From assembly GCF_032062105.1 (NCBI RefSeq), contig NW_026918910.1:62001-126000 (forward strand): a stretch of DNA of 64,000 nt. The letters are read 5' to 3'. Within the stretch, counting starts at the first letter, position 1; every line of letters begins with the position of its first letter. Positions 24,555-33,790 of this stretch are shown piece by piece. Under the pieces are notes generated by a model, which was not told the origin of the DNA, did no database searches, and was given only the letters and a program-made list of their open reading frames with translations. The DNA is from Saccostrea cucullata (lineage: Eukaryota). A program made the position numbers and the translations under genes.

Positions 24555-24632
<78 letters not shown>
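24555..24632. repeat. (TA)n microsatellite
   Basis: About 39 TA units, a few bases downstream of the stop codon of the minus-strand gene. Confidence 0.97.
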
Positions 24633-24638: not shown

Positions 24639-25260
24639 CTAAGACGCTGTTTTCTTTGCTGCTTCCTTTTGGGCGGTTAGGTCCTCTAACTCCTCGATCA
24701 TTGCCGAAGCCTAGAACAAAAATAAATAATAAAAACACTTCTTTTTACTCTTATACAAGAATACTTTTCATGATGTTTAATTCTTAAAATTTTCTATTTG
24801 TCGCGCGTCGCTTGATAGTCAAAAATAGAAAGAATCTGAAAGATCCCCCCAACCTAAGTTACTTTGATAAAAAGGACTCATCTTCAAATCTACCTAAAAA
24901 TTAGATATAATCAGAATCTGATTACGTGTATTTGTTCCAACATCCAACTCACAACTGTAAGCACCAGAAAAGAAGAGTACACATGTAGTCAAAGAAGTGC
25001 AAATGCACTTATAGATTATCACGGATGTACGTATAAGTGACGCGCATTTAGCGAGATTCTCTTCTCTTTTAACCTGGACTCTCATCGTGGATCCAGGATT
25101 TTTTTACCCGGGGGGGGGGGGGTAAAAGGTCGAACTTTGAAAAATTTTCGACAACTAGGCTAAGTCGAATTACAATAGATCTGTGTTACCTGGGGTGGGG
25201 TCCTAGGTTTTTATTTCGTCCTAGGTCTAGGCAAAACCTTCCTCTAGATTTAGGCATCTC

Positions 25261-25303
<43 letters not shown>

Positions 25304-28300
25304 CACTTATTCTGTACTAAATCTCTTCTTTTTATAAAACTTGGATTTGCATGCATAACTTTAAGTTGATTTCCAATAATTAACCTGTTTTAGACTTTGA
25401 TCATGATGATAATAGAAATATTTCCAAAAGGTACATGGAGACACATACCCCAAACTCCTACCCAGGGTGATTATTATACATGTACATGTACCACCTAAAG
25501 TTCTTGTTTCTTAGGTTTTATGGTCTGAATATTACAAACTACGCAAATTTAACTTGTCAATTTAAAAAATAAATGAACAGAAATCATCACATTCCTTCAG
25601 TTCCAAAGAAGATAATATTTCACCCAGGGAATGTATTACCTCTGGAAATTACCTGTTTGTGAAAATAAATATTCATTGTTAATGTCAAAATATTTTGTCT
25701 TCATCGACAAATGCAAGAGGGCAATACTTTTAAACCCTCCATTTTTTAAGAAAAAAAGGATTATTAGAAAAAAAAAACTTTAAGGGCCATAATAGTCAAC
25801 TGAGTGTAATACAACCCTATATAGAAATCTTGAAATAATGAATAATTAAATAATTCTTGTAGCATGGGAAATTTTCTAATACAGTGCCGTGGACCTTCAG
25901 ATATCCGGACGCCAGATATCCGGATGCTTCAATATACGGACGATTTTTCATCGGAACGAAAATTTTAATGTTATTTTGTCTTGTTTAACTGGTGATTCAG
26001 ATATCCGGATGCTTCACATATCCGGACAAATTGACTGGGAACCAAAGCGTCCGGATAAATGAGGCTCCACTGTAAATGATAATGGAGTGTCACCCTTACA
26101 CCAGAAACCCTGTCTTAGGGGCCATAAATTCAGAACAAGCAAGCTCTCTTCCTCATGTACTCAAGAACAGACAAGATTTTTCAGAGAATAATGTCATACT
26201 CATTTTTACTATACCACTAACAGAACCATTCCTTCCCCCCCCCCTCTGACACAGGGGGAGGGCGACATGGGTGGAGAAAATTTTTGAAGAATTTATGCAT
26301 TTTTGGCATTTTGATCCATAGAGCCCAAACTACATTGTAACACCAGAACCCTGAACCTGGGACCATGAGTTTCATATTTTTCTACAGATCTTCATGCTTA
26401 TTTTATTCACGCCAGCAGTTTAAATGCATCATGTCCAGAAGTACACCTTTAGTCAGAGTTGCTATATGCCAAGGTTGGTTGAAACTGGTTTAGTGGCTCC
26501 AGAGGAATTATAGAAAATGTTCAAATGTTAACACACCAACGGCGGAAAAAAACAGCAGCAGGTCACATGATTAGCTCAGGGGAATTAAAATGAGTTCCAC
26601 AATAGCTTCCACAAAACCTTCTGACTACTAAGGAGATAAATTAGGCAAAATTCATTTTCACTCTATTAAGATTACAATTAAATGTGTAAAAGAATAAAGT
26701 TAGTGATTATGTACGAACAATTGGATTAAGGAAGTATGAGATCCTCAGATTAAAGTATTAATAATAATTAAGTTACTGATTAAAATATGGACCATGTTCT
26801 AACAGAAAATTTGTAAATAAATAATAATGTCACAGAGCGCAGACCGACTCATGAGGAACACTGTTGACTATCTGTTAATCCATCCTACATTTTATTTTAC
26901 CTTGATATCACTTCAGGGCAACAGGAAAAAATCCCAGGACAACGGACTATTATTTATACCCATATAATCAGTCATTTCTTAAATACATTGCTATTGAGTA
27001 ATAATGTATTAGACAATATAATTTTTGGATATTACATACATATTACATACATCTAAACATTTCTAAAGTTACATGTACCAACACTCGTAACCTATAGATT
27101 TTTCCATTAATTGATTTTTTTTAAATGGGAAAAAAATGAAAGATTATTTAATAATTTTAAAACTGAGAGACAGAGCATTTATGCTATGTTTACTTTTTTT
27201 TTTCACAAGGCCTTTTAAAAATATCAGTTATTTTTCACAAGGCCTTTTAATAAATATCAGAGTTATGAACAGAAATAAATCTTGGATTTTAACACAGTAG
27301 CTATTGCAAAAAAAAAAATACCTTCTAAAAATTTTACTTGCAGTAAATAAAAGATTTATATTTGGTAAGTTTATTATAAACTTTCCAAAAATATAGAGAA
27401 AAGTTTGAAAGAAAATAAAATACAACTGATAGAAATTAATTATATAGTAACAGTTCGGTCAAACAGTCCAGGGACTCTTACCCAGACATAGAAAGTGGCC
27501 GCGCCAGCTGACACGTCCCTGACCTCCTCAAGGTCAAATTCTTCTAACAGTGACTTAGCCCTCTTTGCTGGGGTCAGTGGAATGTTTTCAGGCTTGCATT
27601 CAATACAGCGTCTCTTCAAGCTTTCCTTTCCTGTTTTTCCCACCAAAGCTTGGACAGCTTTCCAAATCTACAATTATACATTAACATTCCATTCATTTGA
27701 AAAGTTCATTCATTTTAGTAAAGATAGTGACAAGTCTTGTCTCTTTATATTGCCCAGAAAATATGCGTGACAGAGCTTTTAGAGACTCAATATTTTTTAT
27801 ATGCACAAATAATAATTTCATACCATTGCAAAAAATACTAACCATTGTTTAGAAAATGCAAATTTCACAACCTTCACATCAAAAAATACTAAGACAATCA
27901 AATTCTAAAACCTGTAAATTATCAATCAAAGAGTTAGAAATTTTACATTTGATGGCCCCAAAATAATAACCTTGGTTTCCTTTTCCTGGTGGCCAAGTAA
28001 TAAGAAGGTTGCCGTCATGATCTTGTGAACCATGGGGGGAGGGTTCTGATAACTTCTGATCTCCGCTACAGTCGCTTGCTTCAGCTCCAGGATCTCGTGA
28101 CGGATACGCTCCAGCCGCTTCAGTCGTGTAAACAGCTTGTTAGCCTCGCCTAGCTCCTTGGCCAGTGGAACTTCCAATCCATGCTTCTTCACTGCATTGA
28201 TTGCCTTCTCTAATTCTTCTAATTCTCGTTTTGTCATAGCACGATGTAAGTCTAAAATAGTAGTTAAAAATATGGTTTTATTGTTATTTTTTATAGTATC

Positions 28301-31300
28301 CATACATTTCTCTGAAAGAAAGTGTAATATATGAAATAAATTAAAGCAGAATTTCAATGTTTGAAAATTATTTCCAGATTTACAAACTTGATGCAAATAT
28401 CTTCATTTTTTTTTTTTTTTACCAAATAGAATTAGCCTATTTAACATGAAATAAATAAAAATTGTATAGAAAATCCTAATGTTAAGTAATTCACATAAAG
28501 AATAACATCTAATGACTGAAGACACAAACCGTCTCTGACGAGGAGTTCCTTCAGAATTTTCTCTGCTTTCTTCAGGTCCATGTCTGTATCTTCTAGCTTC
28601 TCCTTCTTGAACTCTGTGATGTTGTAGTCCAGCTGGTACCGATCCCGACTTTTGATTGCCACTTTCAAATTGTACCGTAGTTTTCTGTGCCTTTCATCTA
28701 GTTTTGAAATTACATCAATTGTTTACAAGTAAAGTACTAAATGCATTTGCTTCAAGAAAATGCTGAATATGAATTTGAAATCTGAAAGTTCATATTAGAA
28801 ATATTAATACTTTCAATAGAATTCATCTATCTTTGAGACTAATTTTGAACTACTGGAACCCACTCTAATTCACTGTAGTAATCTATTGGACCTGGGAAAC
28901 CGATCTTATAACAGTTTTTGATACTCGTCCCCACTCTGTAGTATTGTAGCAGTCTATTGGACTCAGTTACTGACCTTGTAACTGTTTGTGTAACACCTCA
29001 GTAACTGACCTTGTAACTGTTTATATAACACCTCATTAACTGACCTTGTAACTGTTTATGTAACACCTCAATAACTGACCTTGTAACTGTTTAAAATAAC
29101 TCCTCAGTAACTGACCTTGTAACTGTTTACGTAACACCTCAGTAACTGACCTTGTAACTGTCTACATAACCCCTCAGTAACTGACCTTGTAACTGTTTAC
29201 ATAACACCTCAGTAACTGACCTTGTAACTGTTTATGTAACACCTCAGTAACTGACCTAGTAACTGTTTATATAACACCTCAGTAACTGACCTAGTAACTG
29301 TTTATATTACACCTCAGTAACTGATCTTGTAACTGTTTATGTAACACCTCAGTAACTGACCTTGTAACTGTTTATGTAACACCTCAGTAACTGACCTAGT
29401 AACTGTTTATGTTACACCTCAGTAACTGACCTTGTAACTGTTTGCCTAACACCTCAGTAACTGACCTTATAACTGTATATGTAACACCTCAGTAACTAAC
29501 CTAGTAACTGTTTATGTTACTCCTCTGAAACTGACCTTGTAACTCTTTATGTTTACATAACATCTCAGTAACTGACCTTGTAACTGTTTATATAACACCT
29601 CAGTAACTGACCTTGTAACTGTTTACATAACACCTCAGTAACTGACCTTGTAACTGTTTATATAACACGTCAGTAACTGACCTAGTAACTGTTTACATAA
29701 CACCTCAGTAACTGACCTTGTAACTATTTATATAACACCTCAGTAACTGACCTTGTAACTGTTTATATAACACCTCAGTAACTGACCTTGTAACTGTTTA
29801 TATAACACCTCAGTAACTGACCTTGTAACTGTTTACGTAACCTCCTCTGCTCCTCCTCAGAACCTCCCTTCTTCTTCAGTTTATCCAGCTCCTCTTTTGT
29901 CTTCTTCTCTTTCTCTTCAGCATCCTATACACAAGTATAAAGGAAATATCTTTCTTTTTTCATAATAATAATATTAAGCATAAGTAACTGTACATCAAAA
30001 AAGTAGAGAACACTATTCAAAGGAAAAATTGCTCCTTGTTGAAATATATTTTATGGTGAGAACTTACTCGATTGATCAGATATAACATTTTTTTTGTAAT
30101 ATGTAATAAATAATCAATAGAGCATTAGAGTTTCGACCTTAGCGAATTTTTCCACATCTTTATATAGCTCTTCTTCTTCTTTTTTCCTCCTCTCTTCCTC
30201 TTCTCTCTGTTTTTTCTCCAACTCCCTTAATCGTTCCAATTCCTACAAGATATCCAGAAGAAGAGTGAGCTTCCAACATTACACATTTCTTTGAAATATC
30301 AATGTAGTAGAAAATTATCTTGAAACCTTGTAACAAAATTAACAAATTTTATAAATGACACTGAAGTACTGTAGGATCATGAAAATTCATGCTAGAGTTA
30401 CCTCCTCTTCCTCCCTCCTTCTTCTCTCTTCTTCCTCTTGTCTCTGTCTCTCTGTGTAATATACAAGGCATTATTAAACTTAATCACTTCAGTCATACTC
30501 ATACAGTAAAATGGATAGTCTGACAGAAATACATGCACTTAACCTTCTAATGTTTTATGTTTATTAAGTGTATCAATTACACTATAATCATTACTGCATT
30601 CAACTAACTCTTATAACTACTTGGATAAAGGGATATAACTGAGGAATGTCTTACTGGAAAGTACATTTCTAGGATTGAAAACTAAAGTGATTTCAGATGT
30701 ATATATAGACAGAGAGATACACAATTATATATATTATACATTTCCTTGTTACATAATCTGTATATGAAATCTAAATGATCATGCAGTGGCCTATACTTAA
30801 CCTCTGGTTTTATCATAAAGTGCTGTATAAACACAGAATAAAAGTCAAAGTTACTCATTTTATATACAAGTGATTTTGATTGTGTTGAAACATGCAATAA
30901 AACCATACTTTTCTATATACTAGAAGACTTGCTGAAAAATCACATTCAAGTGCACATGACACAAAACCTTCAGCTCAAACAAATAAATGATGCTCATGAC
31001 TTTATACCAAACAAAGCATCGTAAAAAAAATATTGCATTCAAATAATTATAAATTCTGGCATGCTAAGCTTCAATCCTGAGGCCTTAATAACCGACACAT
31101 CAATCAAATTTTGCACTGATTGACCTCGGTGACGAATTTCTTCCTCGGTTTCCTCGGTTTCTTCTCCTTCCTCCTCCTCCTCATTTAGTTCTGTGCTGAT
31201 TTCTCTTTCTAATTTATTTTAGTTCATAGAATTGTTAGTGTTATCATTTACAGATATCCAACTTATTTACATGTAATTACATATTACAAGAGGTCTTTAA

Positions 31301-33790
31301 ACCTAACTGACATAAAGAAAATAAATCTTTCTTTACTTGAACCATTTAAAATCACTTATCCATTAAATCTTGCATCAAAACTACAAAAGAGAGAATTCTA
31401 AACACAACTAGGAAATTGACACAGTCAGAAAGGGCTAAAGAGAACTCTCATAGGATAAAAGTTATTGTCTGAATATTTCACTTTTACCAAAATGGGAGAA
31501 ATAAATCATTATTTAAAAGACAGCTTCATAGTTCAAGACCTCTGGTTTGTTTGATATGCTTTTTATGGCTTTGTTAAGATTACATACCTTCATCTTCAAG
31601 TTGTCTTTTTCTTCGCAATTCTTCATCTCTCCTTTGTCCCTGCAAGAGAAAAAATATATAATAGTAGTTTCAAGAAATTTTCAAGGTTTTATTTTAAAGG
31701 GACAAAAATACTAAATATTAAGAAGTGCAAACCTCTTCTTGCTTTCTCCGTTCCTCATCTCTCTTCTTCTTTAACCTTGCCACTTCTTCTTCTGCTAACC
31801 TTTCTCTTCTTAATCGATCTAAAATATTTTTTTTTTTGTAAGGTAGTGTTCCATAACCCTACATGTATAATTACATTGATGAAAATGTACATTTATATAA
31901 TTATTATGAAATAAAAAAATAAATTTGAGGTCATCACCCTCTCTCTCCTGTTCCTCCTCCATTTTCTCTGTCTGCAGATCCAGGCGGTTTGGAATACTGC
32001 ACAACATAACTTCTATCTCAGCAAATGCAACAGCACTGCCAGGAATCGGACGGCCCTTAACAAACTCCTCCCACTTCTTCCTGGAGAAATGGCGGCCATG
32101 GACAGTTTGAACAAACCATCTAGAACATAAATGATTTTATTTGGCATATACCAGTATAAAAAATGAAGGTTAAACAAGAAATCTGTGAGGCAATGCTCAC
32201 TAGGAATACCTCCGCGCTGATGTGAATAAACACTATCATGTTAATATACACAAGTTCCATTACAGACAGATGCACAGACAAACAGGAAGTTGACATCAGA
32301 TTCATATCAAAATTAATCCCACCATATGGCATGCCTCGACAAAGAGTGTACTAAAATTTCAAGCATCTGCTGTGATTAGTTGATGAGAAAACTGCAACAA
32401 AAAATTTGTTATGTATGAAATGGACAGACGCAAAAACAAACAGGAAGTTGACATCAGATTTGACCAAAAATGTATTCCACCGTATGGCATGCCTCAGAGA
32501 AAATTGTGTTAAAATTTCAAGCATCTGCGATGAGTACTTGCTGAGAAAACTGTGACGAAAAATTTGTTACATATGAAACGTACAGACGCACATACAAACA
32601 GGAAGTTGACAATGGATTTGACCAAAAAAGTATCCCACCTTATGGCATGCCTCAGAGAAGATTGTGTTAAAATTTCAAGCATCTGCAATGAGTAGTTGCT
32701 GAAAAAACTGCTACGAAAATTTATTATGTATGAAACGGACAGATGCACAGACAAAAGGGAAGTTGACATCGGATTTAAACAAACATGTATCCCATCGTAT
32801 GACATGCCTCAGAGAAGACTGTGTTAAAATTTCAAGCATTTGCGATGAGTAGTTGCTGAGAAAACTATGACGAAAATTTGTTATGTATGCAACCGACAGA
32901 TGCACGGACAAACAGGAAGTTGACATCGGATTTAAACAAAAATGTATCCCACCGTATGGCATGTCTCGGAGAAGATTGTGTTAAAATTTCAAGCATCTGC
33001 GATGAATAGTTGCTGAGAAAACTGCGACGAAAAATTTGTTAAGGACAGACAGACAGACAGACACACAAGGGTAAAACAGTATACCCCCTCTCCTTCGGAG
33101 CGGGGGTATAATAATTAACTTTCCAACAAAATGTTGTCCTTTCTCAATGTAAGAGTGATCAATTCATTATTTTTTAATCAGATACACAAAGATGAAATTG
33201 TTTGGGAATAAATAAATTTACATTAATGTACTAACTGCTTTTAGATAAACAAATTTACCGAGCTTCGTCCTGTGTAATGGTGTCTTTGTGATGTACATCT
33301 ATCATGGAGAATTCCCATCTGAAGTCCTGAATCAGGAAGTAGCGACGGTCCATCTCCTGTAGTAGAGCATAAAGCTCTGAGGACTCGCAGAAACTGCGAT
33401 GGACACACACATACTTCATTGACTCCATAACCTGCAATACAAGTACAGATATTACTCATAATTTGTGATTTATAAAGCAAAATTCTATTTTTATAAAAAG
33501 GAACATATGCAACATAGGCAATTAAAAGCTAAATATTAATAATAATTATAAAGTTCTCTTTCAGTTTTTCAGTTATATTTATTTTGATGGGATACAGCTT
33601 CTAAAATCACAATTTTCTTTTATTCCAGTGTTTGAAAAATAAAATTTACTTGTGGTAAACTGATTCCTCCCATTCGGAGATCTCCATGCAGTATCTGCAT
33701 CTGTATTGGAGACAGGCTCCCTTTTCCATCTGTATCATAGTTGTTGAAAATGGTCTCCAAAACCACTCTCTCATCTAGAAGACCTCCCAT
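24639..33790 (-). CDS. Uncharacterised protein of about 548 aa: N-terminal EF-hands, long E/R/K charged helix, C-terminal dynein-heavy-chain MTBD-like domain
   Basis: Exons (minus): 33650-33790, 33259-33431, 31938-32119, 31733-31818, 31588-31639, 31125-31208 (acceptor uncertain), 30402-30451, 30138-30206, 29822-29924, 28530-28697, 27971-28251, 27482-27667, 24639-24710. Phases are consistent (1647 nt). EF loops DTDGKGSLSPIQ and DVHHKDTITQDE. C-terminus ELKQATVAEIRSYQNPPPMVHKIMTATFLLLG..IWKAVQ..VRDVSAGAATFYVWASAMIEE. Confidence 0.85.
25257..25300. repeat. (CT)n microsatellite
   Basis: Direct CT run. Confidence 0.9.
25720..26590 (-). mobile_element. Degraded HINE remnant containing a nested MITE
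   Basis: Monomer motifs CACCAGAACCCTGAACCTGGGACCAT as in 37895-39144; end AGGTCACATGATTAGCTCAGGGGAATTAAAA. Confidence 0.5.
25881..26072. mobile_element. Short TA-flanked MITE with ATATCCGGA repeats
   Basis: TACAGTG...CACTGTA termini; internal ATATCCGGA(C/T) repeats. Confidence 0.7.
28960..29843. repeat. 35-bp tandem array (about 25 units) derived from the end of exon 9 and its splice donor in the EF-hand/MTBD gene
   Basis: Unit AACACCTCAGTAACTGACCTTGTAACTGTTTATAT (period 35, e.g. 29701 and 29736). On the minus strand the seed is TTACGTAAACAGTTACAAG|gtcagttactgaggtg (..LRKQLQ|donor). Confidence 0.95.
32173..33112 (-). mobile_element. HINE with 5 copies of an approximately 158-bp satellite monomer
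   Basis: GGAAGTTGAC at 32285, 32443, 32601, 32758, 32915; (GACA)n; terminal TATACCCCCTCTCCTTCGGAGCGGGGGTATA hairpin. Confidence 0.82.

What the first reader, a model, noticed from the sequence alone, without database searches (positions are those of the whole stretch)
24639..33790. Motor-less protein combining EF-hands, a single-alpha-helix-like rod and a dynein-type microtubule-binding domain
The C-terminal about 120 aa (ELKQATVAEIRSYQNPPPMVHKIMTATFLLLG..W..E..VSAGAATFYVW) follows the dynein heavy chain stalk-tip pattern (L...L.E.RS...PP..V......C.LLG...W......S.A...L..W) as I recall it. It is preceded by a coiled coil but has no AAA ring, and the gene is complete at about 548 aa. The N-terminus has EF-hand-like loops, and exons 4-9 encode alternating E and R/K runs typical of stable single alpha helices. 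Inference: a calcium-responsive microtubule tether, or a competitor for dynein sites, possibly in gill cilia or sperm flagella.
Basis: partly seen in the sequence, partly recalled or inferred. Interest (0 to 1): 0.75.

Follow-up and report, generated by a model that had tools for sequence, protein, structure and literature searches.

The report
Motor-less protein with dynein microtubule-binding domain
An oyster gene, currently labelled only "trichohyalin-like", encodes an EF-hand-like head, a highly charged helical rod and a genuine copy of the microtubule-gripping tip of the dynein motor without the motor, and the same tip module is reused in dozens of other non-motor proteins of marine invertebrates.

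Summary
A GT-AG gene on the minus strand (ATG 33790, stop 24639-24641) has 12 exons that each match, at 100% and in order, the NCBI protein "trichohyalin-like isoform X2 [Saccostrea cucullata]" (P0176, 532 aa). A 13th candidate exon is probably an acidic alternative cassette.

The C-terminal about 150 aa are homologous to the dynein stalk tip:
- A family profile hits solved dynein MTBDs at E 6.5e-9.
- AlphaFold models align to them at Z 12.8-17.4.

No dynein AAA exons lie on the contig. The N-terminus has a four-EF-hand fold, but its Ca2+-ligand positions are degenerate, so "calcium-responsive" is not supported. Residues 155-295 are 68-86% charged.

- The protein is an orthologue group running from ctenophores and sponges to amphioxus and tunicates.
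- The same module sits at the C-terminus of KY/hillarin-like transglutaminase, CLCA-like and 4-TM proteins.
- About 30 copies of its exon occur in this genome.

Pfam's MT model recognises 2 of 68 orthologues. My paper searches found no description. Microtubule binding, expression and tissue remain untested.

The parts
33650..33790 (-). Exon 1 (ATG; aa 1-47): first EF-hand-like helix-loop-helix
   Evidence: 100% identical to P0176 residues 1-47. EF-hand_6 at E 0.0016 for the exon alone.
33259..33431 (-). Exon 2 (aa 48-105): EF-hand-like lobes 2-3, including the highly conserved LQEMDRRYF block
   Evidence: 100% identical to P0176 48-104. Near-invariant columns in A2.
31938..32119 (-). Exon 3 (aa 105-166): EF-hand-like lobe 4 and start of the charged rod
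   Evidence: 100% identical to P0176 106-165. AF2 pLDDT is above 90 up to about residue 140.
31733..31818 (-). Exon 4: E/R/K-rich rod
31588..31639 (-). Exon 5: E/R/K-rich rod
31125..31208 (-). Candidate alternative cassette exon ('E6', 84 nt, acidic), not part of P0176
   Evidence: AG/GT sites and phase fit. No match in P0176. Annotated isoforms of three other oyster species carry acidic inserts at the same exon 5 / exon 7 junction. No RNA evidence.
30402..30451 (-). Exon 7 in my numbering (6th exon of P0176): rod
30138..30242 (-). Exon 8: rod
29822..29924 (-). Exon 9: end of the rod. Its last bases and its donor are the first unit of a 35-bp tandem array.
   Evidence: (100% to P0176 264-297).
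28530..28697 (-). Exon 10: first conserved helical repeat of the C-terminal module
   Evidence: Conserved in the module of other architectures (A1).
27971..28251 (-). Exon 11 (aa 354-447): second helical repeat, CC1, and MTBD helices H1-H2 (EIRSYQNPPP...LLLG)
27482..27667 (-). Exon 12 (aa 448-509): MTBD helices H3-H6 (W449 ... VSAGAATFYVW)
   Evidence: Alone it finds nothing in the PDB.
24639..24710 (-). Exon 13 (aa 510-532 plus stop): CC2, the return strand of the short stalk hairpin
   Evidence: AF2 helix 501-531.

Best explanation
The gene encodes a non-motor protein with four parts.
1. Residues 1-148: a calmodulin-like four-EF-hand-fold head whose Ca2+-ligand positions are largely degenerate.
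2. Residues about 150-300: a rod that is 68-86% E/K/R/D, of single-alpha-helix type, and variable in length and sequence among orthologues.
3. Residues about 300-383: two conserved helical repeats.
4. Residues 384-532: a dynein-type microtubule-binding domain, made of six short helices held on a short antiparallel CC1/CC2 hairpin that ends at the free C-terminus.

Shown here: the gene model, the absence of a motor, homology and fold identity of the tip with dynein MTBDs, the EF-hand fold with degenerate loops, and the wide reuse of the module.

Inferred: the tip still docks on the tubulin surface used by dynein. With no AAA ring to shift the coiled-coil registry, it would act as a static, ATP-independent anchor. 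The rod would hold the EF-hand-like head some 20 nm away (140 residues at 0.15 nm per residue). The head would bind a partner helix constitutively, as light-chain-type EF-hand proteins do. On this reading the protein is a microtubule-tethering adaptor rather than a calcium switch.

The same C-terminal cassette would give microtubule anchorage to the KY/hillarin-like, CLCA-like and 4-TM proteins that carry it.
For: Gene model: 12 exons at 100% identity and contiguous in P0176.

Homology to the dynein MTBD:
- Exon 11 alone against the PDB gives dynein stalk tips, best E 0.0032.
- Profile A1 gives 30 hits at E<=1. Of these, 24 are named dynein. Five more are dynein-size chains (4,191-4,625 aa) or 6rzb_C, whose entry is the dynein-1 MTBD. 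One is FAP114 at E 0.27. The best hits are DNAH6 at 6.5e-9 and the yeast MTBD 6kio at 2.3e-8, covering H1 to H6.
- Orthologue P0038 passes Pfam MT's own cut-off (26 against 24 bits).

Fold:
- AF2 of P0176 has mean pLDDT 84.3, with 85-94 across the tip.
- 11 of the top 12 VIA rows are dynein stalks or MTBDs: 3err_A Z 17.4, rmsd 3.9 over 144; 6kjo Z 15.3, rmsd 2.6 over 136; 6rzb_C Z 14.6; 6l4p_B Z 14.0; 2rr7 Z 12.8.
- The module-only model (P0049) has pLDDT 95.8 and pTM 0.86. All but one of its 31 listed Foldseek rows are dynein entries.

No motor: no AAA_8, AAA_9 or Pfam MT match lies on the window's contig or on the paralogue contigs.

Microtubule-contact residues: the six yeast salt-bridge residues come from passages of Nishida 2020, PMC7042235, section 9.
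- Conserved in 68 orthologues: E3122 corresponds to E417 (68 of 68), R3124 to R419 (64 R, 4 K) and R3152 to K450 (61 of 68).
- The other three positions have a conserved basic residue in the adjacent column: K411 (64 of 68), K458 (68 of 68 K or R) and R497 (61 of 68).
- Median net charge of the globular tip is +4.

Position in the protein: the module lies within 60 aa of the C-terminus in 109 of 124 proteins, as a free-ended hairpin requires.
Against: - No experiment or expression data bear on microtubule binding.
- Three of the six dynein salt-bridge positions are replaced in-column: K3117 by Q412, R3159 by G457 and R3201 by D498.
- The family has a conserved three-residue insertion (the KTGK block) after H3 that the dyneins aligned lack.
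- Pfam MT fails on P0176 itself (no hit at E<=1) and hits only 2 of 68 orthologues at E<=0.01.
- Foldseek E-values are modest (6.8e-5 to 1e-2).
- The structures are predictions. The rod between residues 201 and 260 has pLDDT of only 51-64.
- The role proposed for the head is by analogy only.
Confidence: 0.55

Rival explanations
1. The tip is a dynein-derived fold that has been re-purposed. It no longer binds microtubules and instead recognises another ligand, for example another cytoskeletal filament or a protein partner, through the family-specific conserved basic block after H3.
For: - Three of the six dynein-microtubule salt-bridge positions are substituted in-column.
- The most conserved family block (G457, K458, T459, G460, K461, K465, R466) includes a three-residue insertion absent from the dyneins aligned.
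- The module is attached to very different partners: transglutaminase/Ig-like_KY, CLCA+VWA and 4-TM proteins.
Against: - The dynein-contact residues that are kept (E417, R419, K450) are invariant or nearly so.
- The substituted positions keep a basic neighbour.
- The tip keeps a net positive charge.
- Passages of Nishida 2020 say that the H3 contact residues also differ among true dyneins, with Dictyostelium using other H3 residues.
Confidence: 0.3
2. One reading: a Ca2+-responsive microtubule tether, or a competitor of dynein, acting in gill cilia or sperm flagella.
For: - EF-hand fold at the N-terminus.
- Loop 1 keeps D1, D3, G6 and L8, and loop 3 keeps D1, I8 and E12 in the window protein.
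- 36 of 68 orthologues give an EF-hand_6 hit at E<=0.01.
- The named hits come from animals with ciliated epithelia or larvae.
Against: - Positions 5 and 12 of loops 1 and 3 are mostly K and Q across 68 orthologues.
- The P0176 EF-hand score is below Pfam's cut-off (22 against 25 bits).
- Vertebrates have motile cilia but do not appear among the named hits.
Confidence: 0.1
3. Artefact: a dynein heavy-chain fragment, a pseudogene or a mis-assembly, or helical or coiled-coil similarity arising by chance.
For: Single-exon evidence is weak: E 0.0032, and nothing for exon 12 alone. Long helices give middling structural scores by chance, as the tool's own note warns.
Against: - An intact ORF identical to an independent NCBI model.
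- Full-length orthologues from ctenophores to amphioxus.
- Profile E of 6.5e-9, with 29 of 30 hits being dynein or dynein-size chains.
- The dynein rows stand 3 to 8 Z units above the next class.
- No dynein AAA exons nearby.
Confidence: 0.02

Closest known systems
Dynein heavy chain stalk tip / microtubule-binding domain (Pfam PF12777 'MT'; solved as 3ERR, 6RZB, 6KJO, 6KIO, 2RR7, 6L4P)
   Same: The order is CC1, six short helices, CC2. The signature is shared: E-I-R/K-S, a PP turn, L-L-G, an invariant W in H3, and S-x-A-A...W in H6. Profile E is 6.5e-9 and Z is 12.8-17.4. Three of the six microtubule salt-bridge residues are kept in-column.
   Different: It is not embedded between AAA4 and AAA5, and there is no motor at all. 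The hairpin is only about 25-30 residues per strand and ends at the protein's C-terminus. There is a three-residue insertion with a conserved basic block after H3. Pfam MT misses 66 of 68 orthologues.
KY (kyphoscoliosis peptidase) / hillarin-like transglutaminase proteins of invertebrates (Pfam Transglut_core plus Ig-like_KY)
   Same: Many of them end in the same helical-repeat plus MTBD-like cassette, at 30-43% identity to exon 11 and with the same exon boundaries, in this genome. Database examples are P0004, P0007, P0075, P0139, P0090 and P0259.
   Different: The window protein has no transglutaminase or Ig-like_KY domain. Its head is EF-hand-like. That leech hillarin sits at the axon hillock is my recollection, not from any call, and I did not test whether hillarin itself carries the cassette.
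Calmodulin-like and penta-EF-hand proteins (calpain domain VI, sorcin, FCaBP, calmodulin)
   Same: Four helix-loop-helix units over about 145 residues: Z 8-9.4, Foldseek E 1.5e-3 to 1e-2, and the ESM Atlas nearest clusters are all EF-hand.
   Different: The canonical ligand positions are degenerate and the Pfam EF-hand score is below the cut-off. These Z values lie in the range that the tool says can reflect only a common helical arrangement.
ER/K single alpha-helix (SAH) spacers, as in myosin VI/X and caldesmon (named from my own knowledge)
   Same: About 140 residues with 68-86% charged and 7-21% hydrophobic residues, and dense i/i+3 and i/i+4 opposite-charge pairs. Long helices are predicted.
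   Different: Not shown to be a stable monomeric helix. AF2 confidence is low over residues 201-260, and G-containing breaks occur near residues 195 and 283-285.

Membership tests
Dynein MTBD / stalk (Pfam PF12777 MT) | Scores above the Pfam MT gathering cut-off (24 bits) | tested here: not met
   P0176 has no MT hit at E<=1, and none of the 9 exon translations submitted (of 13 modelled) has one. Only 2 of 68 orthologues hit at E<=0.01. P0038 scores 26 bits.
Dynein MTBD / stalk (Pfam PF12777 MT) | Significant sequence homology to solved dynein MTBDs across H1-H6 | tested here: met
   Profile A1 against the PDB: DNAH6 at 6.5e-9 and yeast 6kio, 6kjo and 6kjn at 2.3e-8. 29 of 30 hits are dynein or dynein-size chains.
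Dynein MTBD / stalk (Pfam PF12777 MT) | Fold: antiparallel CC1/CC2 hairpin capped by six short helices | tested here: met
   AF2 models. VIA Z 12.8-17.4 with rmsd 2.3-3.9 Å over 122-144 residues to MTBD-only structures. Foldseek TM-score normalised to the target is 0.63-0.72. These are predicted structures, not solved ones.
Dynein MTBD / stalk (Pfam PF12777 MT) | Lies between AAA4 and AAA5 of a dynein motor ring | tested here: not met
   0 of 79 AAA_8 matches and 0 of 59 AAA_9 matches are on contig C1047. The protein is 532 aa, and the tip ends at the C-terminus.
Dynein MTBD / stalk (Pfam PF12777 MT) | Microtubule-contact residues, meaning the six salt-bridge residues of the yeast MTBD | tested here: inconclusive
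   Three of six are conserved in-column. The other three are replaced but have a conserved basic neighbour. The mapping rests on the HMMER alignment.
Dynein MTBD / stalk (Pfam PF12777 MT) | Binds microtubules | not testable with these tools
   Needs co-sedimentation, TIRF or cryo-EM.
EF-hand Ca2+-binding proteins | Paired helix-loop-helix fold | tested here: met
   Residues 3-149 align to calpain PEF (Z 9.4), FCaBP (8.9) and calmodulin (8.9). pLDDT is 91-96.
EF-hand Ca2+-binding proteins | Canonical 12-residue loop with acidic or polar ligands at positions 1, 3, 5 and 12 (E or D at 12). This definition is from my own knowledge. | tested here: not met
   Loop 1 has K at position 5 and Q at position 12. 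Loop 3 has H at 3 and K at 5. Across 68 orthologues, position 12 is Q in 44 (loop 1) and 41 (loop 3), and E in 14 and 15.
EF-hand Ca2+-binding proteins | Pfam EF-hand score above the cut-off | tested here: not met
   EF-hand_6 at 22 bits against 25 for P0176. 36 of 68 orthologues reach E<=0.01.
ER/K single alpha-helix | Long stretch rich in E, K and R, poor in hydrophobic residues, with i/i+4 salt-bridge pattern | tested here: met
   Windows covering 155-295 have 68-86% charged and 7-21% hydrophobic residues. My pair score is 0.4-0.96, against 0.2 or less outside that region. The score is home-made, not a published predictor.
ER/K single alpha-helix | Stable monomeric helix in solution | not testable with these tools
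   Needs CD, SAXS or AUC. AF2 predicts helices but with pLDDT 51-64 over residues 201-260.
KY / hillarin transglutaminase-like proteins | Transglut_core and Ig-like_KY domains | tested here: not met
   Neither is found in P0176 at E<=1. Both are found in module-bearing relatives P0004, P0007 and P0139, and Ig-like_KY alone in P0075.

The most novel reading that the evidence does not exclude
Early in animal evolution the dynein stalk tip was copied out of a motor gene and became a free-standing, exon-shuffled microtubule-docking cassette. It founded an unrecognised class of ATP-independent microtubule-associated proteins that sit on the motor-binding site of tubulin. One class is an ancient EF-hand/SAH/MTBD adaptor present from ctenophores and sponges to amphioxus and tunicates. 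It is not seen among the named vertebrate, insect or nematode entries returned here. Other classes are lineage-expanded KY/hillarin-like, CLCA-like and membrane proteins, with about 30 copies of the exon in this oyster.
Probability: 0.4. Interest if true: 0.75.

Novelty: new variant of a known kind. Interest (0 to 1): 0.6.

Why it matters
To my knowledge the dynein MTBD has been treated as a part found only in dynein heavy chains. That is my own recollection, and it is consistent with six paper searches that found nothing to the contrary.

If the module binds microtubules, three things follow:
- A stand-alone, naturally minimal MTBD on a short hairpin with a free C-terminus would be a natural experiment on what the tip does when no AAA ring sets the coiled-coil registry.
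- It would define a new family of microtubule anchors that could compete with motors for their site.
- It would suggest a cytoskeletal anchorage for the large and so far unexplained expansions of "kyphoscoliosis peptidase-like" and "hillarin-like" genes in molluscs and amphioxus.

There is also a practical gain. Hundreds of database entries named trichohyalin-like, caldesmon-like, golgin-like or "PERQ amino acid-rich" could be given a meaningful domain annotation.

Tried and rejected
- Pfam exon by exon (9 of my 13 exon translations submitted; exons 5, 6, 7 and 9 were left out as short and low-complexity) gave no MT hit. Exon 12 alone found nothing in the PDB.
- Shared intron positions with dynein. 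I compared the module's two intron positions (just before the H3 tryptophan, and just after the H6 tryptophan) with exon ends of this genome's real dynein genes. In the loci I read (L009/L012, L013, L014, L017, L018, L020, L016, L011) the dynein introns lie elsewhere, for example after H3. I found no support for a shared intron and dropped the idea.
- The ESM Atlas search on the head returned only generic EF-hand clusters with scores of 0.92 or below, which is no functional lead.
- The region-limited search with the head (59 hits among 119 candidates) found only the same orthologue group plus four unnamed proteins of 305-316 aa, which I did not pursue. No vertebrate relative appeared.
- Whether the conserved G-K-T-G-K block could be a P-loop: by eye it does not fit the Walker A pattern (recalled from my own knowledge), so I rejected it.
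Expression, tissue, use of the cassette exon and the exon 9 donor therefore stay unchecked.
- Paper searches: one search served only to find the two structural papers. Searches found nothing on this family or on a dynein-type MTBD outside dynein. Subscription journals and supplements were not searchable. Supplementary Figs 4 and 6 of Nishida 2020, which hold the mutational data and the cross-species comparison, were not seen.
- Papers seen:
  - PMC7042235: search listing plus passages of sections 9 and 11.
  - PMC6629372: search listing plus one passage of section 6.
  - The hillarin paper: not seen, recalled only.


Full report
WHAT IS THERE. The window has no N. Between 24639 and 33790 the minus strand carries a GT-AG gene. 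I worked out its exons from stop-to-stop frames and the raw sequence. They cover consecutive positions 1-47, 48-104, 106-165, 167-194, 195-211, 213-228, 229-263, 264-297, 299-353, 355-447, 448-509 and 510-532. The single residues between them are the split codons. Exon lengths sum to 1599 nt, which is 532 codons plus the stop.

A further candidate exon at 31125-31208 (84 nt, acidic, phase-compatible) is not in P0176. Annotated isoforms of Ostrea edulis, Magallana gigas and Crassostrea virginica carry acidic inserts at exactly this junction, so it is probably an alternative cassette. All later full-length work used P0176, a database protein.

THE C-TERMINAL DOMAIN IS A DYNEIN-TYPE MTBD. Exon 11 alone (93 aa) searched against PDB sequences gives 21 hits at E<=10. 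Of these, 16 are dynein heavy chains by name or entry title, 2 are chains of over 4,500 aa under other labels, and 3 are unrelated. All the dynein hits align at the CC1/H1-H2 boundary, with a best E of 0.0032. Exon 12 alone finds nothing.

A profile of 15 short family members that contain the whole module (A1) gives 30 hits at E<=1. Twenty-four are named dynein. Four are chains of 4,191-4,625 aa matched at the stalk tip. One is 6rzb_C, whose entry is the mouse dynein-1 MTBD. One is FAP114 at E 0.27. The best are DNAH6 at 6.5e-9 and the yeast MTBD constructs at 2.3e-8, aligned from H1 through H6.

AlphaFold2 of P0176 with 68 orthologues (A2) gives mean pLDDT 84.3. It predicts CC1 at 384-408, short helices at 412-420, 426-438, 443-446, 449-456, 464-470, 478-488 and 493-499, and CC2 at 501-531. 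Foldseek against the PDB returns two classes: dynein stalks and MTBDs (9fqr_K2 at 6.8e-5; 5ayh, 3wuq, 3err, 6rzb, 6kjo) and calmodulin-like proteins.

VIA-align puts dynein entries in 11 of the top 12 rows. The exception is a radial-spoke chain with rmsd 34 Å. The MTBD-only structures score as follows:
- 3err_A: Z 17.4, rmsd 3.9 Å over 144 residues.
- 6kjo: Z 15.3, rmsd 2.6 over 136.
- 6rzb_C: Z 14.6.
- 6l4p_B: Z 14.0.
- 2rr7: Z 12.8.

The next class, EF-hand proteins, starts at Z 9.4. The tool warns that helical models can reach Z of about 13 by chance. Here the matches cover the whole domain at low rmsd and agree with the sequence profile.

A module-only model (P0049, 212 aa, an unnamed relative 45-48% identical to the oyster module, folded with 72 sequences) has pLDDT 95.8 and pTM 0.86. 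All but one of its 31 listed Foldseek rows are dynein entries.

NO MOTOR. In this genome Pfam MT, AAA_8 and AAA_9 pick out the real dynein genes together on the same contigs, for example C12779, C22873, C8270, C3701 and C12694. None of the 34, 79 and 59 matches lies on the window's contig C1047 or on the paralogue contigs.

THE REST OF THE PROTEIN. Residues 3-149 fold with pLDDT 91-96 into four helix-loop-helix units. They align to calpain penta-EF-hand, FCaBP, calmodulin and sorcin at Z 8-9.4. Pfam EF-hand_6 reaches 22 bits against a cut-off of 25.

The Ca2+-ligand positions are not kept. In P0176, loop 1 has K at position 5 and Q at position 12, and loop 3 has H at 3 and K at 5. Across 68 orthologues, position 12 is Q in 44 (loop 1) and 41 (loop 3), and E in 14 and 15; position 5 is K in 31 and 32. 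By my reading of the sequence, loops 2 and 4 carry no acidic ligand set. A calcium switch is therefore unlikely, though it is not excluded.

Windows covering residues 155-295 have 68-86% D/E/K/R and 7-21% hydrophobic residues, with dense i/i+3 and i/i+4 opposite-charge pairs (my own score). AF2 predicts long helices there but with pLDDT 51-64 over residues 201-260. Residues 300-383 form two conserved helical repeats that always travel with the tip.

A FAMILY, NOT A ONE-OFF. An exhaustive HMMER search with exon 11 finds 525 proteins at E<=0.001 and 160 at E<=1e-10.

Full-length orthologues with the same head-rod-tip layout carry only automatic names: trichohyalin-like, caldesmon-like, golgin-like, EF-hand domain-containing. 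They come from gastropods, bivalves, a brachiopod, nemerteans, annelids, a bryozoan, an orthonectid, hemichordates, echinoderms, amphioxus, tunicates, cnidarians, sponges (Sycon, Oscarella) and ctenophores.

No vertebrate, insect or nematode name occurs among the 90, 94 and 59 listed hits. These lists are capped and word-seeded, so this is an observation about the lists and not proof of loss.

The same cassette ends proteins of other kinds:
- Transglut_core plus Ig-like_KY proteins (P0004, P0007, P0075, P0139, and the KY- or hillarin-named P0090, P0258 and P0259).
- A CLCA+VWA protein (P0085).
- 4-TM, CD20-like proteins of amphioxus (P0042, P0040).

In 109 of 124 proteins with a complete module, it ends within 60 aa of the C-terminus.

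In this genome, exon 11 has 30 further copies at E<=0.0124 with 27-43% identity, nearly all covering the full exon. There are six each on C7787 and C3251, five on C270, two on C20323 and eleven singles. In the loci I read, the neighbouring ORFs look KY-like by eye, and an exon-12 equivalent follows.

Pfam MT recognises only 2 of 68 orthologues at E<=0.01, which explains the uninformative names.

DOES IT BIND MICROTUBULES? This is inference. Passages of Nishida et al. 2020 (PMC7042235, section 9) name six salt-bridge residues of the yeast MTBD: E3122, K3117 and R3124 on H1, R3152 and R3159 on H3, and R3201 on H6. I mapped them through the HMMER alignment, with numbering checked against the chain range.

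Among the 68 orthologues:
- E417 is invariant.
- R419 is R in 64 and K in 4.
- K450 is K in 61.
- The K3117 column is Q (66 of 68), with K411 next to it (64 of 68).
- The R3159 column is G457 (68 of 68), followed by K458 (68 of 68 K or R).
- The R3201 column is D498 (67 of 68), preceded by R497 (61 of 68).

The globular tip has a median net charge of +4. The same paper's passages say that H3 contacts also differ among true dyneins. A passage of Lacey et al. 2019 (PMC6629372) says only H1 moves on binding. Both are compatible with a constitutively binding-competent tip on a short, free-ended hairpin. Neither shows that this protein binds.

WHAT STAYED UNCHECKED. Expression, tissue, cassette use and the exon 9 donor are all unchecked. 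The run search gave only 5-7% word shares. I worked beside that stretch afterwards and did not look for the gene in read or contig collections again.

NOVELTY. The gene and its relatives are in public databases, so the sequence is not new. What appears undescribed is the identity of the tip: a dynein-type MTBD living outside dynein, ancient in animals and widely shuffled. Six paper searches found nothing on it. The library lacks most subscription journals and supplements were closed, so prior description cannot be excluded. I rate it a new variant of a known kind, with interest 0.6.

Noticed in passing
window 28962-29835 (intron 9, minus-strand gene): A 35-bp tandem array of 24.8 copies at 90% match. 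Read on the gene strand, it begins inside the last 13-14 bases of exon 9 and repeats the exon end plus its GT donor. The intron therefore opens with a ladder of donor-like sites. In the exon's frame, read-through meets a stop within the first units.
   Followed up: partly
window 32265-33041 (intron 2): A 157-bp tandem array of 4.9 copies at 85% match. It produces the repeated short ORFs seen in all frames.
   Followed up: no
window about 24560-24630: A long (TA)n microsatellite starts a few bases after the stop codon, at the start of the 3' UTR.
   Followed up: no
window 31125-31208: An acidic 84-nt candidate cassette exon. It is absent from the NCBI isoform X2, but it parallels the acidic inserts at the same junction in isoforms of three other oysters.
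   Followed up: partly
G000 contigs C7787, C3251, C270 (loci L002, L007, L008 and others): Tandem clusters of five to six genes whose last exons are the same helical-repeat plus MTBD-like cassette. Their upstream exons look like KY/hillarin transglutaminase and Ig-like_KY domains.
   Followed up: partly
P0144 (937 aa) and P0149 (513 aa), unnamed metagenome proteins: The helical-repeat part of exon 11 (about residues 8-50 of the exon) matches these proteins in 5 and 8 tandem stretches. One source calls P0149 a TPR repeat protein. The repeat preceding CC1 may therefore be a separate repeat family.
   Followed up: no
P0085 and P0042/P0040 (Branchiostoma): The cassette also ends a CLCA+VWA protein and 4-TM CD20-like proteins. 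This would place a dynein-type tip on the cytoplasmic tail of membrane proteins.
   Followed up: partly
P0004 (Pinctada imbricata, 1437 aa): The only protein of 124 with more than one complete module (three, at 578-727, 973-1136 and 1273-1431). It may be a fused gene model of tandem paralogues.
   Followed up: no
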